From positions 6,262,001 through 6,326,000 of the forward strand of contig CP075497.1 of the NCBI GenBank assembly GCA_021613535.1: a stretch of DNA of 64,000 bases, written 5' to 3'. The translations under genes and the position numbers were made by a program. Numbering within the stretch: position 1 is the stretch's first letter; each line of letters starts with the position of its first letter. The notes beneath the pieces are model-generated. The model worked only from the letters and a program-made list of their open reading frames with translations. It did not search any database and had not been told where the DNA came from. Shown here in pieces: positions 472 through 56,623 of the stretch. The DNA comes from Adineta vaga (Eukaryota > Animalia > Rotifera).

Positions 472-3400
472 CTAATGTCTTGCACTGTTCATATTTCGAC
501 TTGTATACATATCATTAAATCCAAGTCGAGATACAGATGTATTCGATGATGCATAATTGTCATATGTATTATCATCACCAGAAATATTTTTCCTTAACAA
601 AATATATCAAAGTATTCATCAAACAGAAATTATTGTTCGACTTACTTTTTCTTCTTACGTTTTTCTATTGGAATGTTACTAAAATAAAGAATGCATAAGA
701 TCTTTTACGAAAAAAAAATTCCAATTATTTGTTTACTTTGCATCTAGTTCGATATTTTCTTCACCTTTCATTGCATTTTCAATGGCTGCTTGAATGACTG
801 GTGCTACAACTGGACCTTCGTAATCTCGAGTTGTTCGTGTAGGATGATCCAATTGAAGCAACATAATATTTTCACCCTAATTGAAAAGAATTTTGATTCC
901 TTTTAGTTTCGAAGATAAAATCATACTCTGAAATGAGCAATTTCTGGGATTGAACCAGCTTCAGAATTTGAAGTTAATGGACGAAGTGTATGACGATTAG
1001 ACATTGGTCGAGCAGCCATTTGATCTCTAGAAAATGAAATAAATGAACGCTCGATTTGATGTTTTTTCAATATAGTTTACGTTTCTTTTGATAATTCTTT
1101 CAATGTCCATTTATTATGTTGATCATCAAATTGAATTCGTTTATATAATCGTTCACGTTCATCCATAGGAATGAAATTTTCAATAATTAATTGAAATAAT
1201 TTTGCTTGTTTTTGGATTTCTCGTTGTTCAGCTTCGAGTTCCTCCCGTGCAGTTCGATGATGTTCAGTCACTTCTGTCTTTTTTGCTTCAAGTTTTTTTA
1301 ATTGTTTAGATAATTTATCTCGTTTTGTTCGTTTATCTTCTACTTCTTCTTTAATGCTCGTATATTTTTCATTGATAGTTTGTCGTTCTTCTTCACCTTG
1401 TGCTAATCGTTGTTGAACTTCACGATGACGACGTTCAGCTTCAACAATTAAACGTCTAAAATCAACTCCTATTTCAATTGATTGATTTAAATATAACTAA
1501 ACAAACCGTTTTTGTCGAAGAATTTCTTCTTGTTCACTCGTATGTGTAACAATATCTTTTCCACCGGTGATTAATTTCGATTCCATTTGTTGAATTTTAT
1601 GTTGCATTTCACGACGTTCTTCTTGTTGACGTTCAATCGCTTGCTTTTGATCTTCTAATTCTCGAAGTAAACTTTCTCGTTCGTTTTCTAATCAATCAAA
1701 TAGTAAAATTTCTCTTTTTCAGTATACCGATTTTTATACGAACCATTTATATTTTTCTTATGAAGAATTGTTCGTTTTTCTTCATTGAGTTTATCTTGTT
1801 GTTCCTTTAAAAATAATTCTTCATCATTTTGATCACCATCACCATCATCATCATTCTCATTTCCATCGCGATTACCACGACGACGAGATTTTCGTCCACT
1901 TTTTCCTTTTCCATCTAATCGTTCTTTTAATCGTGCTATCTCATCTTGAAATTTACGTAATAATGCATCTTTAGGATCTTCATTAATACGTGGTTGATTT
2001 TTAATATTTTTAGCACGATTTGCATAACTAAAATATACACCGAATTCTTTTAGCATAGAGAATATAAGAAAAAAATAAAAATATCTGTTAATTATGATTA
2101 GTATAATTAGTTTTTTTTAATCTAATAAGCATTACTATTATTTAAATTACTTGAAAATATTTCGAAAATATCGATGAAAAACCTGTTCATTTAATATTAC
2201 AAAATATAGTTTTAAATATAATCAATTTTTACCGAAGCGTTGTTAATGATTCTTCATAATTATAATCAGCAGGTCCAAGTGTTGCAATCATAATTGTTTT
2301 GGAATTACCACCAAGTGAATCTGAAAGATATATCTTATTATCTCTTTATATAATTAATATATTTATATACTTTGTAATAAACGAGTTAATTTTGAATCAC
2401 GATATGGTACATGAGAACTACCATCAACAAGTGCAGAAATTACATTACCGAGAACAGAAAGTGATAGATTTATATTTGTTGCTTCTTTAAAACGTTCTCC
2501 CTAGATTAATAGAAACGTAATTCTATCTATGCTATTATTCTTATCAATCAAAATCTCACAGTTGATCCCGTTTTTGCTTGACGTTCACTTCCAGCTAAAT
2601 CAACAAGGTTGAGTTTTCCAACTCGAATATGAGCTTGACCATCAACACCAACCTACAAATCACAATTACAATTGAATTATTCTAAACGAAATATTTCATG
2701 CAAATAATTACTTCACTACTTTCGACAGTAATTATAAAAATAGCATGTGATCGTGAACTATGTTCATTCATATTTGTTGCTCTAATAACAAGAAAAAACA
2801 TTGATAAGCAAAGTTTTGAAGATATAATAACTGAGTAACGTTACCCTGTTGATCGATTTAAATTTCCTGTTGTCATAACATGTTCGATTTCTTGCATATT
2901 TTTTGTTATAAATGAACTGAGATCATGTACATGAACACCTTCTTTAGGATGTTCTTGTAATTGTAAACGTTTATTTTGATCTTTTGATAGAAGATCACGA
3001 ATACTTTCCTTGAAGAACAAAAAGAAAACCCGGAATCTCTTGCTTATAAAGAATATTCATATAAAAGAATCTTTACATTGTAAATTTCTAAATAAGAAGC
3101 TCGAACGAGAAATTGTCGAGATGTTGTATGTGCAATTGAATCAAAAACATGTGCAAATGATGATGGAATAATTCCACGTAATTCCACTTGTGATCGAACA
3201 CCTATTTTATTTTATACATCGAATAAGACAATGTTTCTCAAATAGATATTCAATTCTTTACCTTCCATGGTAAATGTTTTGCCGGTACCCGTTTGACCAT
3301 AAGCAAATATTGTTCCATTGAAACCTTCAATGACTGAATCAACAAGAGGTCGTGCTGTTTGTTCATAAACATCTCTTTGTTTTGAACTAAAATAATTTTA

Positions 3401-3781
3401 ATGAGAAGATAAAGACGAAGATTTTCTTTTACTAACTTCCAATCATAAACAGCATCGAAGTAAAAATTATGTGCGTCTTCACCTGTATTACGTTGCGAAA
3501 GGTCAGTCATTGGTCGTCGAATAGATATTTGCCGATGTTGACCATCGATATTCACTACTCTGATATAATAAAATAATGAAGAGATATTGAAAGAATAAAA
3601 TTATAAGAAGAATAACCTATCACAACCAGATTCTTGTTCTTTCTCACTCATCGGCCGACATCGTACGACGACTCGAACAGATTCATCTTTACCCTTACTC
3701 GCTGCCGTAGTTGGACGTGGCTACAAAAAAATCGTTCATAAATCCATCAGATACAACTGAACAAAATATTAGATTTACCAT
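472..3781 (-). CDS. KIF3B: Kinesin-2 motor subunit KIF3B-like (multi-exon)
   Basis: The first coding exon is only ATG (3779-3781) followed by GTAAAT. Exon 2 reads [28 protein letters not shown]. Motor motifs present: [57 protein letters not shown]. The tail [30 protein letters not shown] is typical of KIF3B/C. Stop TAG at 472-474. Confidence 0.92.
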
Positions 3782-3882
3782 TTTTGCAGCTTCTAACAAT
3801 ATAAATATGACGTCCTATGTACTATTATTTAACAGCTGTCAACTTTTTCCTCACTACCACACATCATCATCAGCTCATATTA

Positions 3883-3894
3883 GTTACTAAGGAC
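3883..3894 (-). promoter_or_regulatory. Candidate RFX X-box (GTCCTTAGTAAC) upstream of the kinesin-2 gene
   Basis: An AGTAAC half-site with a GT..AC imperfect inverted repeat lies ~100 bp upstream of the ATG of an IFT motor gene. It is shorter than the canonical 13-14 bp box. Confidence 0.3.
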
Positions 3895-4185
3895 TTTTCA
3901 TTGGTGCAATTTCTAGCGAATACTCATGAAAATTATAGATAGAAATAGAATAGAAAGAAAGTCGACTTGTTTTAGATAGTTACTCTGTTTTCTTCCTCAA
4001 TTCATATTTACCGTTGAAAGGTAACTTTTCTCATCGTATTCAATCGAAAAGTATGATCAATCACGTTCACCTTGCATCTCTTCTTGATATTTATCAAAGG
4101 CAATATCTTTAAGCATTATACATGTGAGATTTTACTTCGAAAAAAATTTTTTTAAGTTTTTAATGTTCATTTCTATCATTCAATG

Positions 4186-5194
4186 TTATTGATGCTGTTC
4201 ATGTGTTTCGAATTCTGGTACTATTGCATTATTTGATGAAAATATCTCGTCATCTACCAATTGTATATGTTCTCGACTAGACATTTCACTTAAACACGTT
4301 CCCAAACCAGTTGTTAATGGTTGAATATTATCAAAAAAGAAGGCATTAATTTGTGCACATATAACGAATAATAAGCCGAATAAATAAAATAAAAGTAAAA
4401 TTATTATTATGAAACCCAATTGACCAACATAATCAGCCATAAATTCATGGACATATAACGGAAAAATTAAGAGAAGAAATTGTAAACCAACTGCAGCAAC
4501 TAATGAACCACACCATCTAAATAAAAATGAAACAATAGGATTCTAAAAATAAAAGATATGATTTCTTTTTTGTTACATACGTTTGTCTCCAACTCATTGG
4601 ACGTTTTGGTAAAATAGTATAAATCAATTGAAAGAATATAAATGAAAATACTCCACTAGAAACTGTTGTTAAAAATTGATAAAATGATTCATGTTTTTCC
4701 AAAATAGCTGGTACTGATGAAAATATAATAATAAATGGCATAATTGCAACAAAAGCTAGAATCATTTTAATCGCAAGAATATTTTGGTTGAGTATGGTTC
4801 GTTCACGTATACGATAAATAATTGTTAAAACATCATCAAAACCAATAAATAATCTTGAGCCAGTAAATAATGATATAACAAAACTAATAATAAAAATTAA
4901 ACCAGCCTGTGTTGATAATGAATGAAGTAATGCATCGATAACATCAGTAAGACCTTGTTCTGGAAAGGCTTTTACTAAACGATCTCGAATTCGATTTTGA
5001 AATTTAGGATCATTCCCAAAGACTAAACTGACGACAGCAAACATACTTAATATCAATGGTAATAAAGATATTAGTAGATAATAAGCAATTAAGGCAGCCA
5101 AGGAAAATGACCAATCATAGATGATTTTCCATGCAAATAAAGATAATTTTCCATTGATACGATCCAAATTCGTTTTTGTAGTACTGAATGACAT
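4186..5194 (-). CDS. yihY: YihY/virulence factor BrkB family inner-membrane protein, bacterial-type (2 exons; intron 4517-4580)
   Basis: LAALIAYYLLISLLPLIL, SLFTGSRLF..FDDVLTIIYR, IYTILPKRPMSWRQT|WCGSLVAA and GQLGFIIIILLLFYLFGLLFVICAQINA follow the YihY pattern. A 64-nt GTATGT...TTTAG intron joins ORFs 4517..5194 and 4186..4440 in frame. Confidence 0.85.
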
Positions 5195-36703: not shown

Positions 36704-38965
36704 ATGAAAACTTTCATCGCATATCTACTGATATTGTTATTATTCTCTGGAATAAAATGTTTCTCAGATGAAAAATCTACTAATATTTGTGATGCAGTAG
36801 TTCGTCAACAACGTAGTACTGACTGTTCACTATGTTTGTCTAAATTTTCTATTGTTCTTTCCACATCAAGTTATGCTATTGATAAACCTGTTCATGGTAA
36901 GTCCATTTCATCTGACGAATTATAAATTGACAAACTGTGCTCTATTTCTAGTCTCTATCAAAAGTAAAACATTAGATACAACCTTTCGTGGTATTCATGT
37001 CGTAGCTCAAGATGAAAACAATCTTCAAATCGGATATTGGAAAATAAATAATCGAACACTAAATGATAATTCATGTGGTGATGGTTTAATCTATAAATCT
37101 GAAGAAACTAAGATCAGTATGGATGCAGTTTGGCAAGTGTCCAGTTCAGTTGCTGGCAATATAGCACTTAAGTATAAGATAGATAATTCAAGTAATGATT
37201 TTAGAATTTCTCTTCGTTTAGGATAACAGTGATTGAGAATGACAATACAATTTATGTGAATTGTTATAACTTCATTCTACAATCGCGAGTAAATATCAGA
37301 TAGATTATAAGATAACAAAATATTTCAGTTCCGCAATTCTCTACTCTACCAAATCGATTATTTTAGGTATCTATTAATTCTTCCAGTATTGATGACGAAG
37401 ATTCTGCATCAAACGAAACGACGACAACAACTACTCCATCTCCTACTTCTAAAACGACGACTGTTTCACCTACATCTCAAGTGACAGTTAACGTTACCTG
37501 GACATTTACAAGTGGTATCAATGTCACAAATGTTCTTATGTCTATCACTAATCTAAAAACACGTCAATGGACTGCTATCGGTTTCGGTCAGAATCAAAAA
37601 ATGGTAAACAAGAAAGACTCATCCTTCTAGTATATAAATAATTTCCTAAAATTAATTACTGCAAAATAGTCAATGACAAAATAGAAAGTGATTTTCACAG
37701 AACGAAATCATTTGATAATTGTTATTTATCACAGCTATCAATGAATTTATTTGATGGTTTCTGGATTTTTTTATAGGGTGAATCACATGTATTTATATGT
37801 AAACGACTTTCTAACGATACAATTGTTATTAATCGATATGTAAATCCAGAAGACCACGATCCTCCCGAACCTGCTGGGTCAGAACAAGGTGGAATATTTA
37901 CACCAGGTCTACAACTATTCAAAGAAGGTGTTGTTACTTGCCAATTCAATTTATCTAACTTTACAACTCAAACATTTGGACAACTGAAAACACTTGACCC
38001 ACTTTCTCAATCAAGACAATATCATCCTTTAATTGCCATTGGAGTACTGGATATTGGTAAGAAATTCTATTTTCCTCCGATGAAAGTTTAATCACACGAC
38101 AAAATTATGTTTAGATGCTGTGACAAAACATTCTTCAGATTCTCGTATAGCTAATCCTGAACTTGTTCAATTGAATCAAAATGGAGTTGTTCTTTTTAGA
38201 GTATCTGTCGTTACAACTGATCTCACTTTTGTACGTACTCATGGAATAATTATGATTTTTACATGGATATTAATCGTCTCAACCGGTGCACTTATTTCAC
38301 GTTATTTTAAAATATCTTGGGCAAATAAATTGATTTGTGGTAAAGCAGCATGGTTTGCTGCTCATCGCTTTCTCATGAGTATGGCAGCTGTTCTGACTAC
38401 AATTGGTTTTCTATTTATTTTGGTCTTCTTACGAGGTACATGGATTGATCAAGGACCAACACGACCTTACGCTCATTCTATTACTGGCGTACTTGTGATA
38501 AGTTTAGCATTCTTCCAGCCATTTATTGCTCTATTTCGTTGTGAACCAGATAGTCGATATCGATTTATTTTCAATTATATACATGCATTTTTTGGTTTTT
38601 CAGCGTTTATTCTTTCAACTGCAGCATTATATCTTGCTACTTATTTTCATGTATTCAAAGATAGTAAAGGTCGAATTGTTATAATTACTTGGATAGGTTG
38701 GGTTGTATTAGTTTTTCTTATTTTTGAATGTATTGAATTTTATATTCGCAAGAAAAATCGTGAATCTGGTTACACCAATATTAACACACCGAATACAACG
38801 ATTAGTGATCTGGTGGAACATCCAACTGCTCCAAAAGTTACTTTAACTAGTTTTGGTAATGAACAAGAAATTTCAATTGAACAAAAGTCAAAAAATATTC
38901 TACTAGCTATACATATATTGGTTGCGGCAACACTTTCAATTATTTTAACTACTTTGATCCTTTAA
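36704..38965 (+). CDS. FRRS1: Ferric-chelate reductase 1-like (Reeler-DOMON-cytochrome b561), multi-exon
   Basis: Signal peptide, then Reeler-like TFRGIHVVAQD..IGYW, a Thr-rich linker, DOMON WTAIGFGQNQKM|GESHVFIC, and a b561 domain with four His (RTHG, AAHR, AHS, IHA) and FRCEPDSRYRFIFNYIH. Confidence 0.85.
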
Positions 38966-39130: not shown

Positions 39131-42100
39131 TCAAACACGTATCTTCTTTCCAGGATTTTTATCTGCTTTAATTACTTTTGTTATTATACCGGCATTACTA
39201 ATACTATCATTATGCCAAGTTCTTGCTCTAAGTAACTGTGATTCCGAACTTTGCAAAACATTATTTTGCGATGGTGATTGTAGTTCAGAATTATTTTTTA
39301 AGAGGACTTTATCACGTTCGTTTTCTAAACCTTTCAAAATGACATATGTATGTTGAAGAAGAATTTGATCATCAACTTCAAATGTTTGTATATCACCTTC
39401 GGTGATATTTCCAGTCCATAGATCTGTTCGTTCGAGATAAATTTGTATTGGAACATCAAGACTAACGTTAACATTTGATAAGACACGAACCATTAAACGT
39501 TTGAGAATTCCAATCCATGCATGAATATCTCGAAGTGAAAGAGCAATTGTTTCTTTCTTAAATGTCATCTCACTAAATTGTTTAACTAAAGTGTTTCGTT
39601 GATCAATATCAAATGATTCTTCTGTTAATGTTGCTTTAACAAAATGACGTACAACATGATCAAAAACACTCTCTTCAATTAATTCATATAAATCAATAAT
39701 ATATTTCAGATGTATCACAGCAAATGGTGGACGTTGAAGAACATGATCATTCAAACAAGCACTTGAACGAATATATTTCTCTACAAACGTTTGGATTGTT
39801 ACTGATTCATTAGTTATTCCATCATCCATATTACGTAGATAAGTAAAGACATAGTCCAATGATCCAAGATAATGAAGCATATCATCATTTTGCATACTAT
39901 TAATTAGATTTTTTAATTTCATTCTTTCGTTTTCTTTGAACAGTTCTTGTTTGATGCGTCGTCGAACATCATTGATTAAGGCTGTATTTTCACTATAGAG
40001 TTCAAATTGATAATTGAGGAAACGTAATTTCTCTGTATCGATTAACGGTAAACAACCAATCATATTTCTTAATGTTAATTCAATTTCTTCAAAATCATAG
40101 ATAATATCTTGACTTTTTCCATACTGATAATTAAGTGTAAATCCATCAGTAATCAATTTGGTACTAATAACGCTTGCATCAAGATATAGAATATGCTCTG
40201 GACGAATAGATTGAATTGGTATGCTATTTTCTTGATAACGATTATTTTCTGCATCATTAAGAATTCGATTATGAAAGAAATGAACGATTTCATTCTGTAA
40301 TTCACCAATCGTTCGTAAACATCCAGCTAAAAGAATGCTACTATTATCTTTTGTTGTATTCAATAAAACCATAGCTAGTTTGGTATGTGTAGCAAAATCT
40401 TCTTTTGATATAGGTAATTCAAATTTTGCTGTTTGACAACCATAACGTACTTCATTGAAATTGAGTTTATACCAGGCATGAACAAATTCTTTATAAAGTT
40501 CAGTCATTGTTTCACAATCAGTACCATGAGTTAAATAATATGCAATTGCCGTTTCAGAAGCTTCATTACGTTTAATACGATGATTAAATTTTTCAATTAA
40601 ATAATTTGTAAAAGTAACGATAGCATATAGATGTTGAATGTTTGTGTAATCAGCTAGACGTTTCATTAAAAATGTTGTTACTGGATAAGTTTCATCACTA
40701 TAGGGTATTGTTTGAAGTTTATTACGAAATTCATTGATTGGATTTGACGTATAAATATTTGTAATATTAAAAAAAGTTAGTAATGGATACTTTCTTTCAT
40801 CTTGAAATATTTCATCAACATAATCATTAAGTGTTGCTTCAGCATCTTGTTGTCGAATATACTCAGAATATGCAGTTTTATACTGATTGATTTCATTTGC
40901 AATTGATTCGATATGATTAAAAAGAATTTTTTCTTCAAGAAGTTTTTCTAATCGTACAACTTTTTCATTCGTATTCATAAAACCTTTGAGAATCAACTCT
41001 TTATCAAGCATATGATTGAATAATTTATATAACCAGATATAGCATTGATCGTTGTCAGTTGTTTGATGATGAAGAAGAGAGTAATCTTTTTCAAAATGTT
41101 CTTGAAAATGATTAGGATTAGGAAGTTCCAAATCTGTTAATAAGGATAGTTCATGAAGAAAAAGTAATGTTGCATGCGTGATCATATGCATAAAACGATA
41201 TGAAATGGATCGATTTAAATGATCGGATTTTTCATATTCATTACTTTGTGCTGCAAATATTAAATTATGATATCCATATCGAGGAATTTTATTGTATTCA
41301 TCAATGTAATCGTTAATAAATTGAAAACCTTCTTCAATACTCATTCGAATCTGTGGAGGATCACGTTCGATAAGAACGCCATATTGTTCTGCACCAATTT
41401 GTTTTTTACATAATGGGCATTGGCTATGATCAACTGGTACACCACAATTAATAAAAAAGAACATCCAATCGCAATCTTTTGAGCACCGAAAAACATATTT
41501 GCCCGGTTCATGTATTTGACCTTGTTCTAAACGTTCTTTCACCGTTGTACGTACATCAATCATCTGACTAATAATGGGATTACTTGATAAAAGTCCAGGT
41601 AAACAAACAGATGATTGTAAATGATTGGTATAATTTTCTGGCATCTTCAAATTTCCATCAAATAGCAATGTACTTAAATAAGATGTATATGACAAAGTTT
41701 TGTATGAAAATAATAGGGCAATGATATTCAATGCAACTAAACGTTGATGTACTTCATCTGTGGTCATTTTCGAATGTAAATGAAAATAAGTTGTGCCACT
41801 GAAATTTGTACATAAGTAAATGAGAAATTTGTATCCAACAAGTTCGAAAGACTCAATTATCTCTTTATTGAGCTCTTTCTCAATTAATTCATGATAATAA
41901 CTATTTGATGAAACATCTTCATTTAAATAGAAACGTGCATAATAGTGTATAAACCATATGAGAAAAGAATAGGATGTAGATTGACTTGTTTGACATTGAT
42001 TAATTAATTGTCGAACTTTATTCGTAGTAACATCTTGAGTAAGAATACGGCTAACTCGAATAAATTCTTCTTGACATTCAAATAATGGCGTTGGTAAAGT

Positions 42101-45100
42101 TAAAACACTTCGAATATCTTGTGTGTCTTGATTAGTAGACACAGCAATCATTGGTTTCATCCAAGTAACATTTCGATTAAAGATAATCTTACGTAAATCA
42201 TTGAGTGTGATACTTGACATTTGACATAATTGTTTAATAATAAATAATTTAATAGTAGAACAAAATAGAAAATCATCTCGAGTAAGTAATTTATCAATAT
42301 CTTCTAGAATTTTATGATGACTATCATTAATGAGAATAAAAGCATAAAGTTGTGCATAATATTTCAACCAAGCAATTAAACTAATTAATGTAATACCCGA
42401 ATCATTGGAAATATTTTGTAACGTTTGAATATTTTCTTCAAACTGTTCAAATTGTGTGCTAAGAATCTGTTCAATCATTTCTTTATTATCTATAGGCAAT
42501 ATCAAATGCATATGAATACGAGCAACCATAATATGTTCAATTTTTCGTGTTGTATCATTTAATTTTTGTAAATAGTCATGTATTTGTTGATATTCACTTG
42601 TTATTTCTTGTAAATCTTCATTAAGATATTCCGAATTTTCAATAAGCGGTAATTGTCCATGAAAATTTTGAATCATCGGTAATAACTGAAGTTTTCGATC
42701 AATATAAGTAAAGATTTTTGCAGAATATTGCCAAAGATTATTATCCGATTTACTCATCAAATCAATGATATCTAGATATTCATCACCATGATCAACAAGC
42801 CAATTTTTTAGAAATTCACTTTCAAGTTTTAATAAAGTTCGTTGAATAACATTTTGATTTGCATTTTGTTCATTGGCATTAATAATTCGTTCTAGATGAG
42901 TAATAAATTTATGAATATCATCACATTTTGCAAATGTAGCATCAAAACCAGCATAACGAATTACTTCTTTAAAAACATTTAATGCTTTATTTGTTGGTAT
43001 TAAAGTTGTGAGACAACGAACAAGACTTATAAATGAACGTAGTTTTTCAAGATTATTTACTGAATAATGTTTCAAACTAAGTATACTTTGAGCAACAAGA
43101 CTGTAAGTTGTAGTTAATTGTTCAATATTATGTATACGATTAATAGTTGATGGCGAAACAAGAAGTTCAATTAAATTCATTAGACTAACTTCAATGAATG
43201 GATCACCATCGCATTGAAATATTTCTTCTTTGACCATTTCTGATTTTGGTGGAATTAAATAAAATTGTTCATTAGTTAAAACCAAATTATATAATAAACT
43301 TTCATTTTTAGTAAATTTCTTATCTGCTTCATCAACAACTATGAATTGTTGAGTAAATAATTCATTGAAATCGTTTTCATTGATTAATTTTGTACTAATT
43401 TCTAATAATCTTAAAATTTCGAATAATTCATTATAATCAATCAATAAATGTTTTAATCGATCATCAATTGATCGCATTGGATTGGTTAAGAGTAAACGGT
43501 GAATAAATAATGAAGGTAACTGATAGATTTTTGCTTCATCTTGCATAAATGATAATTGATCATAATAGTAATATTTAAATAAATCTGTATTAGTCAAAAT
43601 CATTTCAATATTCGAATTATAGATACTTTTCGTGCGTAACTGTTTAATTGCTTTTGCAATTAAATCTTCTTCATAAATGTTTTCTTCTTCGCGTCGTTCA
43701 GACATCATTTGTCGTATCGAACGAATATTTTCATATTCCATTTTGGCACATGGTAAATGTAGATTAAAAATCAATGGCATTTCAATAACTTCAAGATTAA
43801 TAATCGTTATATCGATTGTTTTCAATGTTGATTGTAGACAATCAAACCAGATTTTATTTAATAAATAATTCGAATGATTCTTACAAAGAAAGAAGAATGC
43901 ATCGATTAAAGATGCATTTTCGAAATGATAAAGTAATAAGAGAAGATAACTTTCATAATATTGTGAAATGATATACTGTAATGCATCATTAAATGAACGA
44001 CATGTACCAATGATAATTCCATTAGTTAATAAATCATATCGCCAATCTGTGAATCGTGTTAAAATTATCTTTTCAAGTATTTTTAAAAGATTTTCTTGAA
44101 TAATCGAACGTAAAGATTGAGATTCAATCATAATTGTTAAATGTTCAATAATTTGATTTCGTCGAATATTTATTTGAGATAATAAATCTTTTCTAGTAAC
44201 TGTATAACGAAATTTTGTTAGACAACGATCGATTAATTCATCAAATAAACATTCAGATAGAAGGAAATATGGATGCGTTATTAAATCATGATATGAAGGA
44301 TTCAATAGAATTGTTTTTGGTATTAATTTATGTTCATTTAAATCATTGATCATCAATGTTGACCAACCGTTAAATAAAACTTCATTTGTTGTTTGATTTA
44401 ACATATGACGTTGAAGATGAAAGATTAACCAAACACTTCGATTTGTTGGTGAAACTTTTGAATTTAATAAAATATGTTTCAATAAAAGAATATGTTCATG
44501 TTCTTGATGATAATCAACACGAATAATTAATAGACGTATTTGATCTTGTCTTTGATAATGTTCTTTGACTTTATTTGTTAATTCAACTTCGGTTTTATAC
44601 GTATTCAATTTAACTTCTTCGATTTCATCACATTGATAATCGATGATATGAAAAATTTGTGTATATGTGTAGATAATTTGATTAGGTAAACTATTTTCAT
44701 TCAATGCTTCATGAAGAATTGTATGAAAATCAAATTTTGTATGAATATCATAGTATTGATCGATCAAAGGTTGATATTCATTCGATTGTAATGAAAGTAC
44801 AACAGGTAAATCAAATGAACTTGTTCGAATTAATTTTTCTTTACAATAATTTATCACATCATTCGTATTCGTTTCATCATCAGTTGAAAGCTTTAAATAA
44901 TAGAATGCATCGATAACTAAATTACATATATAATCATTACTATAATCAACAAATAAATGTTGTAATAAGGGAAAATATTTGTTCATATTTAATGGAAGTA
45001 AATTGATTAATTCTGTTAGAATTTGATCAGTAATTGACCAATGACGTTGATGAACCAACGATTTCATATCGATAATATGTTTTTCGAAACGATTTAAAAA

Positions 45101-48100
45101 TGGTGGATCACATTTATTTAAATCTTCTTGTCGAACAAAGACAACACAATAAAAATCATCATTAACAAGACAATGTGGATGATAAAGTGCACCAAGAGCA
45201 ATTCGACAATATTTTTTCTTTCCTGATACAGCAAAATTTTGATTAAATAAATCATATAAATTATCATATAAATGTCCCATACGACGCATAACTAATGTTA
45301 CATTCGTTTCAGCATAGAGTATAACATCCACAGTACACGATGATTATATTGTTCGGTATAAGTCGTACCAGAAACAAAATCTCCGGAAAAACAACTACCA
45401 ATTAATGTTCGTACGGATGGTGGTTGATGTTTAACAATAATATATCTTTCAACATAATCAATAACACCTTCATTTTCAGCAATTAACATTAAATAACGTC
45501 CTTGTCGAGATGTTAATCTTAAATCAAGTAATTGCTTGAATGATGGTGATCGATATTGTTCAATTAAATGTTCGCAATGAAGATGTTCACAAAAACGATT
45601 CCACATGAATTGTGAAGCATCATAAATTCCATCAAAATTAATGACTAATTGTCGACGAATATATTCATAGGATTCATTTTCATTATTACTCACAATTAAA
45701 TCATTAACAACACCTTTAATTAACGAATAAAAATCTCGTAAACCAAAATAATTCGAATGTTTCTGTTGTTCTAGATGTGTAGTGAAAAAAACATATAATT
45801 TATTATATGCAATAGCAAGTGCTTCAATAATCGATGAATCAATTCGTGCGATTTGTCCTTCAGATAGAACTAAAGCATCGGAAATAGTTTTGGCTGTTAA
45901 AACTAAATCTGACATATCAGGATCAGGACATGATAAATAAAGTGCACGATTCATTTTTGATGCATCAAGTCGCCAATTGGATAATCCAACAAAACCATAT
46001 TGACATGTTTCAACTTCCAATTTACTATGTAAAACTTTTAATGGATTATGTGGTGATAATTCAGCAAGGCCAATTTCATCGAAAACAATTACTGGTAAAA
46101 TATTTGCATCAGATTTGGCATTCAGATATTTATCAGCACGTTGAAAGACTTTGATTATACTTTCTGATGTACAATTTTGTGATCCCTGATATGAAACAGT
46201 AACTAATTCAGGTAATGTTTGAAAATATGAATCAGAAGATTTCTTTCCTTTCAAATTACTAATAACAATTTGTACAGCTGACGTTTTACTACAACCTGGT
46301 TTACCACAAATAATAACTGGAATACGATTGATAATACAGACCAAAAGAACAAAAATATTATCTTTTAGTGCACGATTTTTTGCTGTACCCGGTGGTAATA
46401 TCATTCGTTGAATTAATTTATTTTGTTCGACATCAAGAAATTTAACTAAATAATTAGCGATATGTGATCGATTGATTAAGACAGACTTAAGAGTTTCTTC
46501 TATTTGATCTGCATATTCCTTTCGATCAATAGGTGAACTAAGACGAAAATAATAACAGAGTAGAAGTGCAATTAAACTTGAACGTTGTAGAAGAGCTGAT
46601 AAATTATCAGTTAATTTGTCTGTTCCTTCACGTTCAAGAATCGATTGTTGAAACCAATTATATAAACGACAAAATCGTGCGACATCACGTAAAGATACAC
46701 TACTAACATCTTCATGTTTACGAAAGAATTTTTGAGATTGTGAAATAGCTTGTACTATAGAATTAAACCATACATGATCTCTTGCTAAGTATTTACATGT
46801 ATTTAACATGGTTCGAATATATTCACGTTCAACAACATCACCAAGATAACCATAATCCCAAATATATTCTAACATTGTTTCAGGAATTGGTACAACGGTA
46901 TATAAAAGTGAAATACCACAAGCATCTTTTAAACGTTGCATTTCATAAACATCCTTTTTAATACCAATATGATTATCAATGATTTTATTCGTTTCTTTTC
47001 GTCGTTGAGGATTACAAGCACCTAGGAGAACCATATTTTCTGGTATTGATTTACCAAGTAATGTTCGTTCACAAGTTAATTCTTTGATTAAACCAATATT
47101 TGGTGTTGTATTAAATTCATCAAGAAATACCCATAAACGTTTATTTTGTTCGGAACATTGTAGTGCTCGTTGAGATAAATTTTCAATTGTTTCAATAATT
47201 TGTTCACTTGTTACACCTGCATGAATACGAAAGATTTCCATTTCATCATCTAAAATCTTTTGGCAAAGAAATTGTATTAATGCAGTTTTACCGCAACCTA
47301 TAAAATAGAAGGAGATAAATCATATTTTTGTAGTTATTCAACTTCTAAACCTCACCTGTTTCTCCCATAATTAATACTGGCAAACCACTTTGTACTCGTA
47401 AATAGATTAACAACATTTTTAGATAATTATCCGGTGTTAAAACATATTCAGATTGGATTTTTTCTGCAATAGTTTGTTGAAACTTCAAAATATCTTCTGT
47501 TTCAGATGAGAGAGGTCGAATTAACGTATCATTTGTTTCACATTTCGTACATCGTGTCTGATGATTATATTCATATTGACAATAACATTTCGTACATATT
47601 GATTTGTTAAAATATTTCTTAGATAAAGATGCAAGTTTAAGAAAGAATTGTGTATGCGTAAAATGATTATAATCAGGAAAAGCATCCGTTAATTGTTGAT
47701 TCTTTTTTCCCGTTGTAATTTCCAGATATAATTGAAAGGTTTTAACCAGTGATGAAGGAACATTAGTGGGTTTTTTATATACGAATATTGGATCATCCGT
47801 TGCAGAAAAAACAACTGTAAATGGTTGAGTATCATCCCAAGAAACAATTGCATCACTGAATGGAATAAAAGCATCATTTGTATGAACTGAACGTTGATTT
47901 TTTCGGACATGTTCAACACATAAAGAAGTAAATTGATTTGCTGATTGAAGTAAACTTTGAAGAATATCCAAACGTAATTGTGGATCTGGTAATTCATCAG
48001 GAAAAAAATAACCACAACGTGAAAATCCTGAAAATAGACTATGATAAACTGAGATAAAAATTGATACTTTCGTCCATGTGATATATTCTGGATCTTTGCC

Positions 48101-51100
48101 GAATAAGATAGTTTTTTTCAAACGATTGATACAAGTAATTCGATCAATATTATCTTTAGTATCTTCAGTAATACAACGTTCACGAATTGTTCCATCTTCA
48201 ATTGCTTGAAGATATTTTACAATTAATTGAATAGCTGATGAATTACGAATTTCAAATGTACTCCAATCGATCGAATCAATATGTTTGGATTTAATAAATT
48301 TCAATAAAATAATTTTCTCTCGAAAATCAATCGAACTAGGTGATGAATCAAATTCAATATAAATCGGTACATCCATTGGAATATAGACAGCCGTTTGTTT
48401 CAAACGAAAACTTCGAAAAAGTAATAAACAATAGAGAAGTTCATTCAATTGTTTGAGATTATTAATTGCACCAAGATCAATATGTAAAGCTGCTTTCGAT
48501 GATATTAATTCATTTCCATAATTACACAAACGTTCAGCAATATCATCAACATCAATATCACCACTAATTGGAAATTTAATATGAAGTTTACCTTTTTTCT
48601 CAATTTCATTTTCTATAAAATATGTTTTTCCTAAACCATTGATTCTTGATGTAACTAATATACAATTTTCATCAATTGATTGTTCAATAGTATCTTTCAA
48701 ATCATTTTCATTCAACATATCTTGATCATGTATTGTTAGAACGATTTGTAATGTTCGTAAACCATTGATTAATTGTAAATATGTACTGGATACAGTTGTT
48801 ACAATTCCTAAACGAAAATAATGTTGAGAATTTTGTTCCATAAATTGTTTGATTAAACGTGTAAAATGATCTTGAATCGATGAAGATAATAATTCTGGTC
48901 GAATTAATTGATGTAATTTTTGAGAATAAAAACATCGATATGTAAATGCACGAATTTCCATCCAACTTGTTTCTTCCGTACAATAGAATAGATGATTAAC
49001 AAGACATGATGTTTGTGTTAATTTAAATAATGAAAGTATTGCTCGTAAGATTCCTTCATTCGATGTTTCAGCAAGATAAACTTTTTTGATACTTCGACTT
49101 TCTTGTTTAAGTGTTAAATCTGTTTTCATACGTTGTGCTGTTAAGATTTTGCCAATATTTTTCAAACGTTCCATTGGATTTGTACTTTTAACTGGTAAAT
49201 ATTCCGAACGAATTTTATCTGGTTCAATACCAATATATTTCAATAAATGATATCCAGCATGTTGAGTATTTACTAATTCATTCTGTTTATACAAATAACC
49301 TTCAATAATCCAAATTTGTTGATAAGAAAAGTAAGTTAAATCGAGATGTTTTTCATACATTTGACATAAATAGATTTGCCAATGTTCTAAGAGATCATCT
49401 AATTGAATACTAAATTCCATCAATTCTTGATAATTACTATCAATACATGTAAACGATTTATTTGGTGCAAGATAATCGACAATTGATGGATGACCAGTAA
49501 TGTTTAATGATGAAAAATTTTTCAGAATTTTTTCGACAATTTCAACAAATGTAACAAATGCACGACGTTCTTTTATATCACGTTCGGAATCGATAAGAAA
49601 CGGATTTTTTTTATTCGTTGAATATTCAATTAATCTTGCTCGATCACGTAATTCACTTAAATCATTAAAACCCATTGATTGTGGTTGAATATTAATATTA
49701 AATTTATTGGCTTGAACAGTAAAATCGAATGTTATATTTCTCATTAGATCGGATATATGTGTTCGTTTGGATAATTCTTTATCGGTTAATTCTAAATGAA
49801 TACGTTTGATAGTTGGTAATGATGCTGAACAAGTTTGAAAACAATTGAGAATATTTTTAAATTGTTCATCAGTAAACGTTTTCTGAAAAGCCGATTCCGT
49901 TTGTTGAATAGTTGGTGTAATGGATTCCATTTCATGATTAAATCGAACAAAAAATCGTTTTAACATTACGAAATCTAAGATCGTTTTCGTATTTATTAAG
50001 ATTTCATCCCAATCATTGACGGCTTGTAATAAATTATCGACATCAGTAGAAGGAAGAAGATTTAAAAATGTTATTAAATCGTTTGATAAACTGTATTGAG
50101 AAAGAAAATCAAGAAATCCTTTTGAATATTGTTGAGAAAAATATGACAGAAAGTATCGATATTGTGTCCAACATTTTAAACATTGTGTTTGACGATTGAT
50201 TTGTGTGATTTTTCGCAGTTTTCCACACATATCATCCAGAGGTCTTTGAAGATTAAGAAGAAGATTGATATAACCATGACAGATATGATTGATATATTCA
50301 CGATTTTTCCAATAATCTAAAACTGATTTGAGTGTATCAGCAATATTTGACTCTAAAAATGGTTTCAAAATTCCAAAATCATGATCAATATATTGTAAAT
50401 CAGGAAAGAAATTTAATAGATCCAATATTGGTAAACGAGTCCATCGAATGCAAATTGCTTTTAAACGATCACTAAATAAATTCAGAATTTCGATATTCTC
50501 CTTTAAGATTTCAATACAAGTACGTTCATCTGCAGGAATACAATCACTTGAATGTGGTGAATCGTTTAGTGATGGATCTGTATCCAATACAGATTCTAAA
50601 TAGTAAAAAACAAAATTTTCATTACTGAAGATTAATGAACAGTTTGCTGTTTAGGATTGAACGTTAAGCCTCGTCACGCATCTAACCCTATGTGTCAATG
50701 TGATAGATATCGTATAACGATATGAATGCAGTCATAACATCGTCATTTTTTTCAATGTTATTTCGATCGTCTGAATATAATCGATCTATTCAATCAAACA
50801 TCTTGATATATTCAATTATAATCAAGGAGATTTTCAAAATATTAAAGATATTGCTTACTTTCATCAGATAATAAAGTTTCTTCATCACTGATACTATTGG
50901 ACTCAACTTCAGTCGTTGTTGATGATCTAAATTGACCATCTGAAAATAGAAAAACATATGAGAACAAAATTAGTTTATTAAAAGTTTTACTTTTTTTATG
51001 TTTAATTAAGAATGATTGCCAAACGTAGAGCTTTTCCAATGGATTCAGACGATCAGCTAGGGGTACAAGAGCTTGAATTTCATCGGGAATTTTGATTGAA

Positions 51101-53629
51101 CGAATAATTCCACATTTTAATTGAGTTTCGATTTCTTCAAATAGACCAAAATAGATTTGTTTATCAGATGCATATTGACAATAGATTTCTAAACATTTGA
51201 TAATTTTTTCTTTAATTTGAATTTTCTCTTCCATTTCTTGTCGTTGTTTATCAATCAATGAATCGATTTGATATTGTTTTTCTGCCTTTTCTCCTACATA
51301 ATTCCAAATTCGTTGTATTATTTGACGTTCTTCATTCGTAAATTTTTTCCATCCTTGCAATTGATTTGCACGAAAACCTTCTTCTTCCCATGAATTCCAC
51401 AATGCAAGTAATTGATCAATGAGAATCTGTCGCAATTTCGTACTTTTAAAACAATCTTCAAATAGAATTGCATAAATACATGTTGTACTATTCGGTCGTT
51501 CAAATGTATCTCGTAAGATTTCATTGACACTAAATTGAATTTGATCCGTAACTAAATGAATTAAATCATTTACCAATAGACTTCGATCTTGTACTTGTGT
51601 ATAGAGTCGTATTAAATGATATAATGGATTTTGATGATTATGTAATTGTTTTAATTTCTCGAATGATAAACATAATTGTGAAGATATATATTGTTTTTTA
51701 AATTGAACAAGAAAATTTTCATTATGAACATTGATTAATGCTTCAGATATAATTTGATAAATTGATGCTAAAAGGAAGTAGAAATGTACAAGTGAAAAGA
51801 AAATCAATTGAAATTTTACCTTGTTGAAAACAAAGATGAATCATATGTTGAATGAAAATTGTTTGATAGTGTTTATTTTCAAATGCATTAATGAATATAT
51901 CGATATCTTTCATAATTTTGATGGTTATATCATGTTTTCTATTGAATTGATTTGACCATTGTTTTAATACATCTTGATAATCATGATCATTTCGATCATT
52001 GATTTTCTCATCAAATAATAGAAATGAAATACACCATTGTTTAAAGAATTCATAGGAATATGATGCATGAGCATGGGAGAATAGATGCATTAGTAAATCT
52101 CGTTTATTGATTAAAAATAAAATAATTGATGATTTGGAAATAAATGAAATAATCAAACGAATATCTCGAAAATGTTCGATAGTAATGATTAATGAATATA
52201 AGTATTCTTTGATTTTCACACGTAATTGAATACTATTTTCAATTGCTGTATTTACTATTTTGAAGATGTTTTTTGCTGAATCATCTGTTTCGATAGATTC
52301 AATTTGTAGAAATTTAAGTAAAAAGACAATACTTTCAAGATTAACTAGAATAAATTGAAGAGAATGATGAAAATTCATGGAAAGAGAAAATTTGTTTTAC
52401 CAGCTAAACGATCTTCGAAGATAAGTTGATCGAATTGTCGGATGATTTCATCATGGATAGCATGATTATCTTTTTGAATTCCTAAGACTTGTACTAAAGA
52501 AGAAATGTAAATTGGAATTCTTTCTGTTAATTCAAGTTGTTTTAATGAGACAATATTTGAATCGACAAGTTTGAATAAATCCGTCCAGTTTAAACCTAAT
52601 ACTGGTCTTTGTAAGTCTTCTAATCGTTTTAATAAAACATTAGCAAGATCTTTTTTACAATATTCATTTTTCATCCGATGAATTAATGTTATTGTATCAC
52701 TCGATTGAATTAATAATTCAATAGAAAGATAGAGAATAAGACCATGTCGAAATAAAGGCCAATCTTCATTTGTAATTGGTGCAAATATTTGATCGAAATG
52801 TTCTCGAAGATTATCAGTTACTGCTAAAGCAAATTTCGTTGTCGAATGACTTGTTAAATCGAAATTTGATTTTGTAATGGGAAGAATTCCTGCCATACAG
52901 ATAATGAGTTTTTCGTCAAGATGTTGTTTTGCTGGTACAGATAATGCGTAGGATGAATATGCAAGACAATCTTGAAAAAATTCATTGAAATCTGCTAATG
53001 ATAATTTTCGATTTTCATCTTGAATTGCTTTTTCAAATTGTTTAATCAAGATTCTAAATGTATCGTACATATATTGACGAATAATATAATACGTATATAA
53101 ACATAGTTGACTCCAAAAAGGAACATTATGACCTAGAAATCGAAAGAGATAAACATTAGAAATCAACAAAAAGAAGATTCTTACCAGGAGCAGCATCAAC
53201 GATATTTTTAGCAAAATGAACATCAAACAGAAAATAATGTACAGTTGAACGAGGATTATCAAAAACTCGATCTTTTTCATCAATATAATCACGATATGTT
53301 GTATCAGAATGTGGAATTTTTCTTGAAAGACGTAATCGATAATATGTTATTGGTAAACGACCATTTTCAAGCTTAACATATACACGATCTTGTGTATCGA
53401 GAATTAAATCTATATCAGCACGATAAATATATGGACAAACTGCTTCTTGTCCATTGAATGATTCAATTCGATGGAATGTATATTTGATATCATTATTTAG
53501 ATAAGCTTTGATCTTAAACTTTTCATCGATGGTTGTATTTCGTAGAATATATAAATGTACTTTTTGTGTTGTCCATGCCGGAGGTAGAGTTGGTAATTGA
53601 ACTGCCCCACCATCAGTTTCATTTGACAT
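39131..53629 (-). CDS. RNF213: RNF213/mysterin-like giant AAA+ ATPase-E3 ligase (~4,600 aa), RZ finger present, no RING seen; 1-bp frameshift at ~45330
   Basis: LVTSRINGLGKT; YVLTPDNYLKMLLIYLRVQSGLPVLIMGETG|CGKT (intron 47298-47355); FLDEFNT; SVSLRDVARF; GKPGCSKT; SYQGSQNCTS; VFDEIGLAELSPHNPLKVLH; SNWRLDASKMNR; FGLRDFYSL; LYDNLYDLFNQNF; PPFLNRFEKH; RZ-like CxxxC...CG...CPLCKKQIG. Confidence 0.9.

Positions 53630-55248: not shown

Positions 55249-56623
<1,375 letters not shown>

What the first reader, a model, noticed from the sequence alone, without database searches (positions are those of the whole stretch)
39131..53629. RING-less RNF213/mysterin-like giant AAA+ E3: candidate invertebrate cell-autonomous immunity machine
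Seen: ~4,600 aa with the RNF213-type AAA+ core (two intact Walker A/B pairs plus degenerate modules), an E3-module-like C-terminal half and an RZ finger. No C3HC4 RING pattern is visible anywhere in the 2066-aa C-terminal ORF. Exons are very long (up to ~8 kb) compared with neighbouring genes. Known: mammalian RNF213 ubiquitylates LPS on cytosolic bacteria through its RZ finger, independently of the RING. Inference: a natural RZ-only version that could tag non-protein or pathogen surfaces in a microinvertebrate.
Basis: partly seen in the sequence, partly recalled or inferred. Interest (0 to 1): 0.8.

Follow-up and report, generated by a model that had tools for sequence, protein, structure and literature searches.

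The report
RING-less RNF213-like giant ligase gene
This bdelloid rotifer gene encodes a roughly 4,650-residue relative of the human immune ubiquitin ligase RNF213 from a separate, undescribed branch that has no RING domain and an altered zinc-finger active site, and as assembled a single missing base breaks its reading frame.

Summary
The giant gene is real. It lies on the minus strand at 53629-39131 and has about 4,650 codons. Three things tie it to RNF213: an RNF213-type AAA+ core (E 1e-65 to solved RNF213 chains; Walker A/B pairs in AAA3 and AAA4; a further P-loop in AAA2), an RNF213-type E3 module (structural Z 12.0 and 14.5 to the human E3 module, collinear) and a homologous C-terminal domain.

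No RING or U-box exists anywhere in it. The site where canonical RNF213 carries its RING is helical and has no Cys or His.

- It is not an RNF213 orthologue that lost its RING. In a tree it falls in a separate RING-less lineage, together with giant intronless genes from unidentified metagenome organisms. A weaker C-terminal relative occurs in a ciliate. This genome has no canonical RNF213.
- The RZ finger is a variant. The nucleophile Cys is kept, but the zinc-binding His is Cys and the general-base His is Tyr. Pfam scores it 26 against a cut-off of 27.
- The 647-aa and 2066-aa ORFs are not exons split by an intron. One base present in all homologues is missing at 45331/45330. Whether that is real or an assembly error could not be tested.

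An immune role is untested. Earlier reports of this scan described RZ-less cousins elsewhere in the same genome.

The parts
53185..53629 (-). Exon 1: ATG at 53629, 148 codons plus 1 nt. Encodes an N-terminal domain with no Pfam family.
   Evidence: Collinear with residues 61-172 of the Adineta ricciae relative P0064 and with L010:7333-7764 in A. steineri.
52401..53132 (-). Exon 2. The intron before it, 53184-53133, is 52 nt, GT..AG.
   Evidence: Aligns to P0064 181-319.
51820..52344 (-). Exon 3. The intron before it, 52400-52345, is 56 nt.
   Evidence: Aligns to P0064 429-601.
50859..51767 (-). Exon 4. The intron before it, 51819-51768, is 52 nt.
   Evidence: Aligns to P0064 594-854.
47356..50646 (-). 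Exon 5: arm, linker, AAA1-2 and the first half of the AAA3 Walker A. Its 5' end is unresolved; in-phase acceptors lie at 50646, 50595 and 50577.
   Evidence: The family profile A4 hits RNF213 chains at E 1e-21, best stretch at the approach to AAA3.
48617..48640 (-). AAA2 P-loop (NGLGKTYF). G-K is invariant in 12 relatives.
47540..47596 (-). Four-Cys insert (CxxC-x11-CxxC here, x10 to x11 in other bdelloids) just before AAA3. It is absent from the two metagenome relatives aligned there, and it is not a RING.
   Evidence: No Pfam zinc-finger family at E<=0.1.
47298..47355 (-). 58-nt GT..AG intron that splits the AAA3 Walker A (GETG|CGKT).
39131..47297 (-). Last exon (8.2 kb in homologues): AAA3 to AAA6, hinge, E3 module, RZ finger, C-terminal domain and stop. 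In the window the one-base gap divides it into two frames.
   Evidence: It is a single open frame in A. steineri (L010:8001-16127) and in the paralogue on contig C1 (2743-aa open frame).
47104..47136 (-). AAA3 Walker B (LWVFLDEFNTT).
46279..46311 (-). AAA4 Walker A (GKPGCSKT).
46060..46095 (-). AAA4 Walker B (VIVFDEIGLAE).
45330..45331 (-). Frame break. One base (the A of a Met codon in homologues) is missing between these two positions, and an in-frame stop follows at 45298-45300.
   Evidence: Protein comparison with 11 homologues. DNA alignment with the A. steineri orthologue.
41072..43924 (-). E3 module: residues 470-1420 of the 2066-aa ORF.
   Evidence: AlphaFold model with pLDDT 82.7. VIA-align Z 12.0, 656 residues aligned to the human RNF213 E3 module 3702-4627, next hit Z 6.7. 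hhalign against canonical RNF213 gives probability 94.7%, E 6e-8.
42776..42892 (-). The place where canonical RNF213 carries its RING. Here it is helical, with no Cys and a single His. The placement is approximate.
   Evidence: hhalign columns, secondary structure of the model, coordinates.
41381..41485 (-). Variant RZ finger, ORF residues 1283-1317. Zinc ligands C1283, C1287, C1305 and C1308; putative nucleophile C1296; Y1317 at the general-base position.
   Evidence: Human reference residues are from PMC11549300.
39134..40114 (-). C-terminal domain. It includes the family-invariant motif at 39410-39457 (Y-x2-R-x-D-x-W), which aligns to the E2-binding segment of RNF213.
   Evidence: hhalign probability 91.9%, E 7e-7. 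Invariant columns. Mouse E2 contacts located.

Best explanation
This is a bdelloid-rotifer gene for a giant AAA+ ubiquitin ligase of the RNF213 type. It belongs to a non-canonical, RING-less lineage, not to RNF213 proper.

Shown:
- A dynein-like AAA+ core with nucleotide-binding motifs in AAA2, AAA3 and AAA4.
- An E3 module with the RNF213 fold.
- A zinc knuckle homologous to the RZ finger that keeps the nucleophile cysteine (C1296).
- A homologous C-terminal domain.

Inferred mechanism, by analogy with RNF213: ATP binding in AAA3/AAA4 licenses the E3 module. An E2~ubiquitin docks on the C-terminal domain, not on a RING. Ubiquitin passes to C1296 as a thioester and then to a substrate. That last step has no His as base; a Tyr stands in its place (Tyr in 38 of 63 bdelloid copies). 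The poorly conserved N-terminal arm would choose the target.

The target and the biological role (defence is one possibility) are unknown. In this assembly a one-base gap at 45331/45330 separates the motor from the ligase half. It is most likely a very recent or heterozygous mutation, or an assembly error.
For: Relation to RNF213:
- AAA core: E 1e-65 for the single exon and 1.4e-138 for the family profile against RNF213 chains, with Walker motifs in place.
- E3 module: the same human chain, 9jwg_A, is top for two overlapping models. Z 12.0 (656 residues, human 3702-4627) and Z 14.5 (370 residues, human 4504-4979), against next-best 6.7 and 5.2.
- Profile-profile comparison with canonical RNF213: 94.7% for the E3 region and 91.9% for the C-terminal domain.

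Active site:
- The four zinc Cys are invariant in 22 relatives.
- The nucleophile Cys is kept in 54 of 63 bdelloid copies.
- RNF213 works without its RING, binds E2 through its C-terminal domain, and uses the RZ Cys (PMC12075652; PMC11549300).

Selection: dN/dS against the A. steineri orthologue is 0.27 upstream and 0.25 downstream of the break, and there is no stop in 2066 codons at about 28% GC.

Separate lineage:
- In the tree the canonical clade has 100% support on a branch of length 3.56. The bdelloid clade has 96%, and its sister is a metagenome protein at 99%.
- The AAA exon scores E 1e-104 to 1e-145 against RING-less relatives, but only about 1e-56 to 1e-73 against canonical RNF213.
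- This genome has no canonical RNF213.
Against: - The His that serves as general base is Tyr here. In mouse RNF213 the H4483A mutant has more than 10-fold lower activity, and in ZNFX1 the H1881N mutation abolishes RZ-dependent transfer.
- The Pfam RZ score is just under the cut-off (26.0 against 27).
- The E2-contact residues of mouse RNF213 (F5093, W5097, D5101, Y5106, E5108) are not conserved in the aligned segment.
- The reference sequence has a frame break upstream of the whole ligase half.
- No transcript evidence could be obtained.
- The A. steineri orthologue lacks about 1,800 N-terminal residues, including half of the AAA3 Walker A. The full machine is therefore not needed everywhere.
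- Structural Z-scores of 12 to 14 can occur by chance among helical proteins. Here they rest on collinearity and on the profile matches as well.
Confidence: 0.6

Rival explanations
1. Pseudo-ligase. The protein keeps the RNF213-type motor and scaffold, but the RZ finger is only a structural zinc knuckle. Without the His base it does not transfer ubiquitin and acts through ATP-driven remodelling, oligomerisation or binding.
For: - The base His is replaced by Tyr in the window and in 38 of 63 bdelloid copies. Nine copies have also lost the nucleophile Cys.
- The His is important in RNF213 and ZNFX1.
- RZ-less relatives exist in the same genome.
Against: - The nucleophile Cys is kept in 54 of 63 copies, next to four invariant zinc Cys.
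- The C-terminal-domain segment that aligns to the E2 site is the best conserved part of that domain.
- Loading of the Cys does not need the His.
- Asp, Glu or His occur at the base position in some paralogues.
Confidence: 0.22
2. Origin by horizontal transfer. The bdelloid family was acquired from a protist, rather than inherited from an ancient animal paralogue that other animals lost.
For: - The nearest non-bdelloid relatives are giant single-ORF genes on gene-dense metagenome contigs. A more distant relative is in the ciliate Stentor.
- The gene has far longer exons than the 50 to 60-nt-intron genes around it.
- Canonical animal RNF213 is much more distant.
Against: - The donors are unidentified. 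The sister sequence P0115 sits beside an EGF_TEN-like gene and could be from an animal.
- The gene has six ordinary introns, host-like GC content and conserved synteny between Adineta species.
- An old duplication followed by losses explains the tree equally well.
Confidence: 0.2
3. One reading: a canonical RNF213 orthologue that secondarily lost its RING in rotifers.
For: Overall length and domain order match RNF213. The stretch from the end of the first profile match to RNF213 (within the hinge) to the C-terminus is 2066 residues here, against about 2093 in human.
Against: - The gene lies outside the fully supported canonical clade.
- All relatives on its side of the tree lack a RING.
- The RZ type (Cys instead of the zinc-binding His, and a longer first loop) is shared with those relatives and not with canonical RNF213.
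Confidence: 0.05
4. A freshly dead gene. The frameshift is real and fixed, so only a product of about 2,620 residues (arm plus AAA1 to AAA4) is made, if any.
For: A one-base gap relative to every homologue, followed by a stop 10 codons later.
Against: The downstream 2066 codons are open and show the same dN/dS as the upstream part. The break can therefore only be very recent, confined to one haplotype, or an assembly error.
Confidence: 0.15

Closest known systems
RNF213 / mysterin (vertebrates; RNF213-like proteins of molluscs, annelids, bryozoans, cnidarians)
   Same: - Giant size and the same domain order.
- Six-module dynein-like AAA+ core with active-looking AAA3 and AAA4.
- E3-module fold.
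- RZ-type zinc knuckle carrying a Cys at the nucleophile position.
- Homologous C-terminal domain.
   Different: - No RING, and no U-box, at the E3-module site.
- In the RZ finger the zinc-binding His is Cys, the first loop is 2 residues longer, and the general-base His is Tyr.
- The E2-contact residues are not conserved.
- No Pfam family, CBM20 included, matches the arm.
- It branches outside the canonical clade.
ZNFX1 (the other RZ-finger E3)
   Same: An RZ-type finger with a catalytic Cys, coupled to an NTPase module.
   Different: ZNFX1 is an SF1 helicase and has no AAA+ core, no RNF213-type E3 module and no RNF213-type C-terminal domain. It keeps the Cys/His dyad.
RZ-less RNF213 relatives in the same rotifer genome
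   Same: Same genome, an RNF213-type motor and scaffold, no RING.
   Different: By those reports they have no RZ finger but carry a GOLD domain and ubiquitin-like repeats. Their AAA region is only 29 to 36% identical to this gene over partial matches.
Unnamed giant proteins from metagenomes (P0252, P0188, P0074) and a Stentor coeruleus hypothetical protein (P0205)
   Same: RING-less, and the RZ finger has Cys in place of the zinc-binding His. In the AAA tree P0252, P0188 and P0074 fall on the same side as the bdelloids. P0205 was not in that tree and is tied in only by the profile match to its RZ and C-terminal region.
   Different: P0252, P0188 and P0074 keep the general-base His (IGG-x2-H), whereas P0205 has Asp at that position. 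P0252 and P0188 are single ORFs without introns and lack the bdelloid four-Cys insert before AAA3.

Membership tests
RNF213 (canonical) | Dynein-like AAA+ core with Walker A and B in AAA3 and AAA4 | tested here: met
   E 1e-65 for the exon and 1.4e-138 for the profile against RNF213 chains. All four motifs are present.
RNF213 (canonical) | E3-module fold between the hinge and the RZ finger | tested here: met
   VIA-align Z 12.0 and 14.5 to the human E3 module 9jwg_A, collinear. hhalign probability 94.7%.
RNF213 (canonical) | RING finger (C3HC4, or C3DC4 in some bivalves) about 490 residues before the RZ finger | tested here: not met
   No RING or U-box by Pfam at E<=0.1. No RING pattern in any exon. 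The aligned site is helical and has no Cys.
RNF213 (canonical) | RZ finger with a Cys-His-Cys-Cys zinc site and a Cys/His catalytic dyad | tested here: not met
   The nucleophile Cys and three zinc Cys are present, but the zinc-binding His is Cys (C1287) and the base His is Tyr (Y1317).
RNF213 (canonical) | C-terminal domain that binds E2 through F5093, W5097, D5101, Y5106 and E5108 (mouse numbering) | tested here: inconclusive
   The domain is homologous (hhalign 91.9%, E 7e-7). The contact residues are not conserved, although the aligned segment is the family's invariant Y-x2-R-x-D-x-W. A structural match could not be tested because full-length chains are excluded from VIA-align.
RNF213 (canonical) | Branches inside the clade of animal RNF213 sequences | tested here: not met
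   The canonical clade has 100% support and excludes the bdelloid sequences.
RNF213 (canonical) | CBM20 carbohydrate-binding domain in the N-terminal arm | tested here: inconclusive
   No Pfam family in exons 1 to 5 or in the arms of relatives. The fold was not predicted.
Pfam PF20173 ZnF_RZ-type | Score at or above the gathering cut-off of 27 bits | tested here: not met
   26.0 bits, E 7.2e-6. The A. steineri orthologue and many paralogues carry the precomputed PF20173 label.
RING-less RNF213-like lineage (not described in the papers searched) | RNF213-type AAA3/4 core, no RING, an RZ finger with Cys instead of the zinc-binding His (C-S-x2-C or C-x-C), and grouping apart from canonical RNF213 | tested here: met
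Active transthiolating E3 ligase | E2~Ub-dependent thioester on the RZ Cys, followed by transfer to a substrate | not testable with these tools
   Needs biochemistry.

The most novel reading that the evidence does not exclude
RNF213-type machines come in two old lineages. One is the known RING-bearing lineage of animals. The other is an undescribed RING-less lineage spread among microbial eukaryotes, in which E2 docking on the C-terminal domain plus an all-Cys RZ finger is the whole ligase. That would make the RING a late add-on. Bdelloid rotifers hold an expanded branch of this second lineage, possibly gained from a protist, which has swapped the catalytic His for Tyr and may therefore ubiquitinate a different class of nucleophile or substrate.
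Probability: 0.25. Interest if true: 0.75.

Novelty: new variant of a known kind. Interest (0 to 1): 0.5.

Why it matters
In human RNF213 the RING is dispensable, and the RZ finger together with the C-terminal domain does the work. A natural lineage that never carries a RING is independent evolutionary support for that mechanism. It also offers smaller, intron-poor, RING-free proteins for biochemistry.

The bdelloid copies add a natural experiment on the catalytic dyad: Cys is kept while His is mostly Tyr. Some paralogues have also lost the Cys, which gives ready-made active and inactive pairs.

If a defence role were shown, RZ-type non-protein ubiquitination would extend beyond animals that have interferon. 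None of this has been demonstrated. At present this is a well-supported annotation with an open question about activity and a possible assembly error.

Tried and rejected
- **A 47-nt intron at 45338-45292 joining the two big ORFs.** I proposed it and rejected it. All homologues read through that stretch, and the DNA alignment shows a single missing base.
- **The upstream RING exon (55419-55721) as a cryptic RING of this gene.** Rejected. It resembles RNF175/121-type proteins. In A. steineri it is a separate 324-aa gene at the syntenic place. Relatives with full N-termini start without a RING.
- **The four-Cys insert before AAA3 as a RING.** Rejected: it has only four ligands and no Pfam match.
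- **Plain Foldseek against the PDB.** No significant hit, although RNF213 had the highest probability.
- **VIA-align wide search.** RNF213 could not appear because chains over 3,000 residues are left out.
- **hhalign in global mode.** It gave a meaningless alignment.
- **Sequence searches against the PDB.** The 2066-aa ORF alone found no RNF213, and neither did the 1080-aa ORF alone. The C-terminal-domain profile found nothing.
- **Exact-pattern scan of metagenome contigs for either allele of the break.** No match.
- **One paper search with loose terms.** It returned nothing relevant.
- **The spliced protein was never joined.** Every search used single exons by reference.


Full report
**Source and gene layout.** The window is AT-rich (about 27 to 31% GC across the gene). 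It lies on contig C6 of a 100.8-Mb, six-contig genome. The closest proteins are from Adineta steineri at 77% identity, followed by other Adineta, Rotaria and Didymodactylos, so this is a bdelloid rotifer of the genus Adineta. On the minus strand a chain of overlapping open frames runs from an ATG at 53629 to a stop at 39131. Four short GT..AG introns (52, 56, 52 and 58 nt) and one longer intron with an unresolved acceptor join exons 1 to 6. The 58-nt intron splits the AAA3 Walker A into GETG|CGKT. Exons 1 to 4 align in order with the N-terminus of a deposited Adineta ricciae relative, so they belong to this gene. The sum is about 4,650 codons. Each was searched by reference, and that joined step is left out.

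**The frame break.** I first read a 47-nt intron between the 647-aa and 2066-aa ORFs. That is wrong. Every homologue reads straight through this stretch: the A. steineri orthologue, other bdelloid relatives, and canonical RNF213 from a lizard and a mussel. The paralogue on contig C1 likewise has a single 2743-aa open frame across it. The DNA alignment with the orthologue shows that the window lacks a single base, the A of a Met codon, between 45331 and 45330. A stop follows 10 codons later. In homologues this is one exon of about 8.2 kb, for example L010:8001-16127.

Against A. steineri, dN/dS is 0.27 over 636 codons upstream of the break and 0.25 over 2,065 codons downstream. The downstream 2,066 codons contain no stop despite the low GC content. 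The break is therefore very recent, confined to one haplotype, or an assembly error. I could not settle which. An exact-pattern scan of metagenome contigs found neither allele.

**Relation to RNF213.**
- The 647-aa ORF matches solved human and mouse RNF213 chains at E 1e-65 over human 2487-3114, with the AAA3 Walker B and the AAA4 Walker A and B aligned.
- A profile of 22 bdelloid relatives matches mouse RNF213 at E 1.4e-138 from AAA3 into the hinge, and again after the RZ finger.
- The exon 5 profile matches at E 1e-21, mostly at the approach to AAA3. It also shows a further invariant P-loop (GLGKT), presumably AAA2.
- The middle of the C-terminal half is not recognisable by sequence alone. 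An AlphaFold model of ORF residues 470-1420 (pLDDT 82.7) has the human RNF213 E3 module as its best structural match: Z 12.0, 656 residues aligned, human 3702-4627, next hit Z 6.7.
- A second model, ORF 1255-2066 (pLDDT 75.6), hits the same chain at Z 14.5 over human 4504-4979, next hit Z 5.2.
- Profile-profile comparison with canonical RNF213 proteins gives 94.7% (E 6e-8) for the E3 region and 91.9% (E 7e-7) for the C-terminal domain. Both alignments are collinear.

**No RING.**
- Pfam finds no RING or U-box in any of the seven ORFs at E<=0.1.
- The 2066-aa ORF has a single Cys-rich cluster, the RZ finger. No exon matches a RING pattern, even with the fourth ligand allowed to be His or Asp.
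- In the profile alignment the canonical RING columns fall on ORF residues about 814-852. That stretch is helical in the model and has no Cys. The placement is approximate.
- A RING-type exon 1.8 kb upstream (55419-55721) belongs to a separate RNF175/121-like gene.
- A bdelloid-only four-Cys insert before AAA3 is not a RING.
- Among canonical invertebrate RNF213-like proteins the same site holds a C3HC4 RING, a C3DC4 variant, a U-box (one protein), or a gap (Capitella).

**The RZ finger is a variant.** Human RNF213 uses C4505, H4509, C4525 and C4528 for zinc, C4516 as nucleophile and H4537 as base (PMC11549300). The mouse equivalents and their mutational tests are in PMC12075652. Here the pattern is C1283-x3-C1287-x8-C1296-G-x7-C1305-x2-C1308-x8-Y1317. 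The zinc-binding His is Cys, the first loop is two residues longer, and the base His is Tyr. The four zinc Cys are invariant in 22 relatives. Among 63 bdelloid copies the nucleophile Cys is kept in 54, and the base position is Tyr in 38 and His in 4. Pfam scores the window's finger 26.0 bits against a cut-off of 27.

**The C-terminal domain.** In mouse RNF213 the E2 binds residues F5093, W5097, D5101, Y5106 and E5108, and mutating W5097 or E5108 abolishes activity. I located that segment in the solved chains. In the profile alignment it falls on the rotifer motif Y1965-x2-R1968-x-D1970-x-W1972. That motif is invariant in the bdelloid set, and R1949, D1970 and W1972 stay invariant when the metagenome relatives are added. 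The residues differ from those of RNF213, so an E2-docking role is inferred, not shown.

**Which lineage.**
- A profile search of 1.84 billion representative proteins with the E3 and RZ region found only 158 hits.
- Outside bdelloids these include giant proteins on metagenome contigs, two of them called as single ORFs: 4,326 aa from activated sludge and 4,516 aa. There are also two proteins of about 4,600 aa each split into two calls, and a Stentor coeruleus protein.
- None of them has a RING. Their RZ fingers also use Cys in place of the zinc-binding His, but most keep the base His.
- The window's AAA exon scores E 1e-104 to 1e-145 against them, and only about 1e-56 to 1e-73 against canonical RNF213.
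- In a maximum-likelihood tree of the AAA3-4 region (33 sequences) the 14 canonical sequences form a clade with 100% support on a branch of length 3.56. The 14 bdelloid sequences form a clade with 96% support, whose sister is a metagenome protein at 99%, inside the RING-less group. The tree is unrooted and some branches are long. The split is safe, but the direction of RING gain or loss is not.
- This genome has one close paralogue on contig C1 (48 to 58% identity, the same RZ type, no RING), three remote loci, and no canonical RNF213. Earlier reports of this scan describe RZ-less relatives in this genome with GOLD and ubiquitin-like domains. I did not re-examine them.

**Mechanism.** Taken from the literature: RNF213 needs neither its RING nor any other adaptor, ATP binding to AAA3/4 activates it, the E2 docks on the C-terminal domain, and ubiquitin passes through the RZ Cys. 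All the corresponding parts except the base His are present and conserved here. The most likely reading is therefore an ATP-gated transthiolating E3 that works without a RING. The missing His is the main doubt. It may reduce activity, change the preferred acceptor, or mark a non-catalytic role. The target-selecting N-terminal arm has no recognisable domain. It is largely absent from the A. steineri orthologue, which goes from exon 1 and 13 residues of exon 2 straight to the AAA3 exon.

**Known or new.** Invertebrate RNF213 homologues are mentioned in the literature: an expansion in symbiotic bivalves (PMC9993606) and induction in cnidarian immune cells (PMC13319465). In the held library I found no paper on rotifer RNF213 or on a RING-less lineage. 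The bdelloid proteins are deposited as unnamed products. I rate this a new variant of a known kind. An immune role is plausible by analogy and untested.

Noticed in passing
window 55419-55721 (minus strand): A RING-finger exon 1.8 kb upstream on the same strand. It resembles RNF175/RNF121-type proteins and is a separate 324-aa gene at the syntenic place in A. steineri. It is not part of the giant gene.
   Followed up: partly
L010:7333-8001 (A. steineri orthologous locus): The orthologue keeps exon 1 and 13 residues of exon 2, then runs directly into the AAA3 exon. About 1,800 residues are missing (arm, AAA1-2 and the first half of the AAA3 Walker A), yet its 2,708-codon ORF is intact.
   Followed up: partly
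window 47540-47596 (minus strand): A CxxC-x10/11-CxxC insert just before AAA3. It is present in all bdelloid relatives aligned and absent from the two metagenome relatives. The spacing recalls small zinc ribbons, and there is no Pfam match.
   Followed up: partly
P0100 (U-box), P0097 (Capitella), P0083-P0090 (Dreissena, Mya and Mactra) at the RING site: Canonical invertebrate RNF213-like proteins vary at the RING position. One has a U-box instead, the Capitella model has a gap, and several bivalve (Dreissena, Mya, Mactra) copies have Asp in place of the RING His.
   Followed up: partly
window 36852-37226 and 38120-38965 (plus strand): Reeler-domain and cytochrome b561 open frames lie just downstream of the giant gene. 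They are probably one gene like ferric-chelate reductase. A Reeler gene sits at the same place in A. steineri.
   Followed up: no
P0036, P0039, P0041, P0051, P0115: A subset of bdelloid paralogues, and the nearest metagenome relative, have lost the RZ nucleophile Cys (replaced by Ser, Thr or Phe) while keeping the four zinc Cys. They are candidate natural inactive forms.
   Followed up: partly
G000:C1:11161370-11169600 and G000:C1:11246403-11247200: The close paralogue and one of the remote RNF213-like loci lie only about 77 kb apart on contig C1.
   Followed up: no
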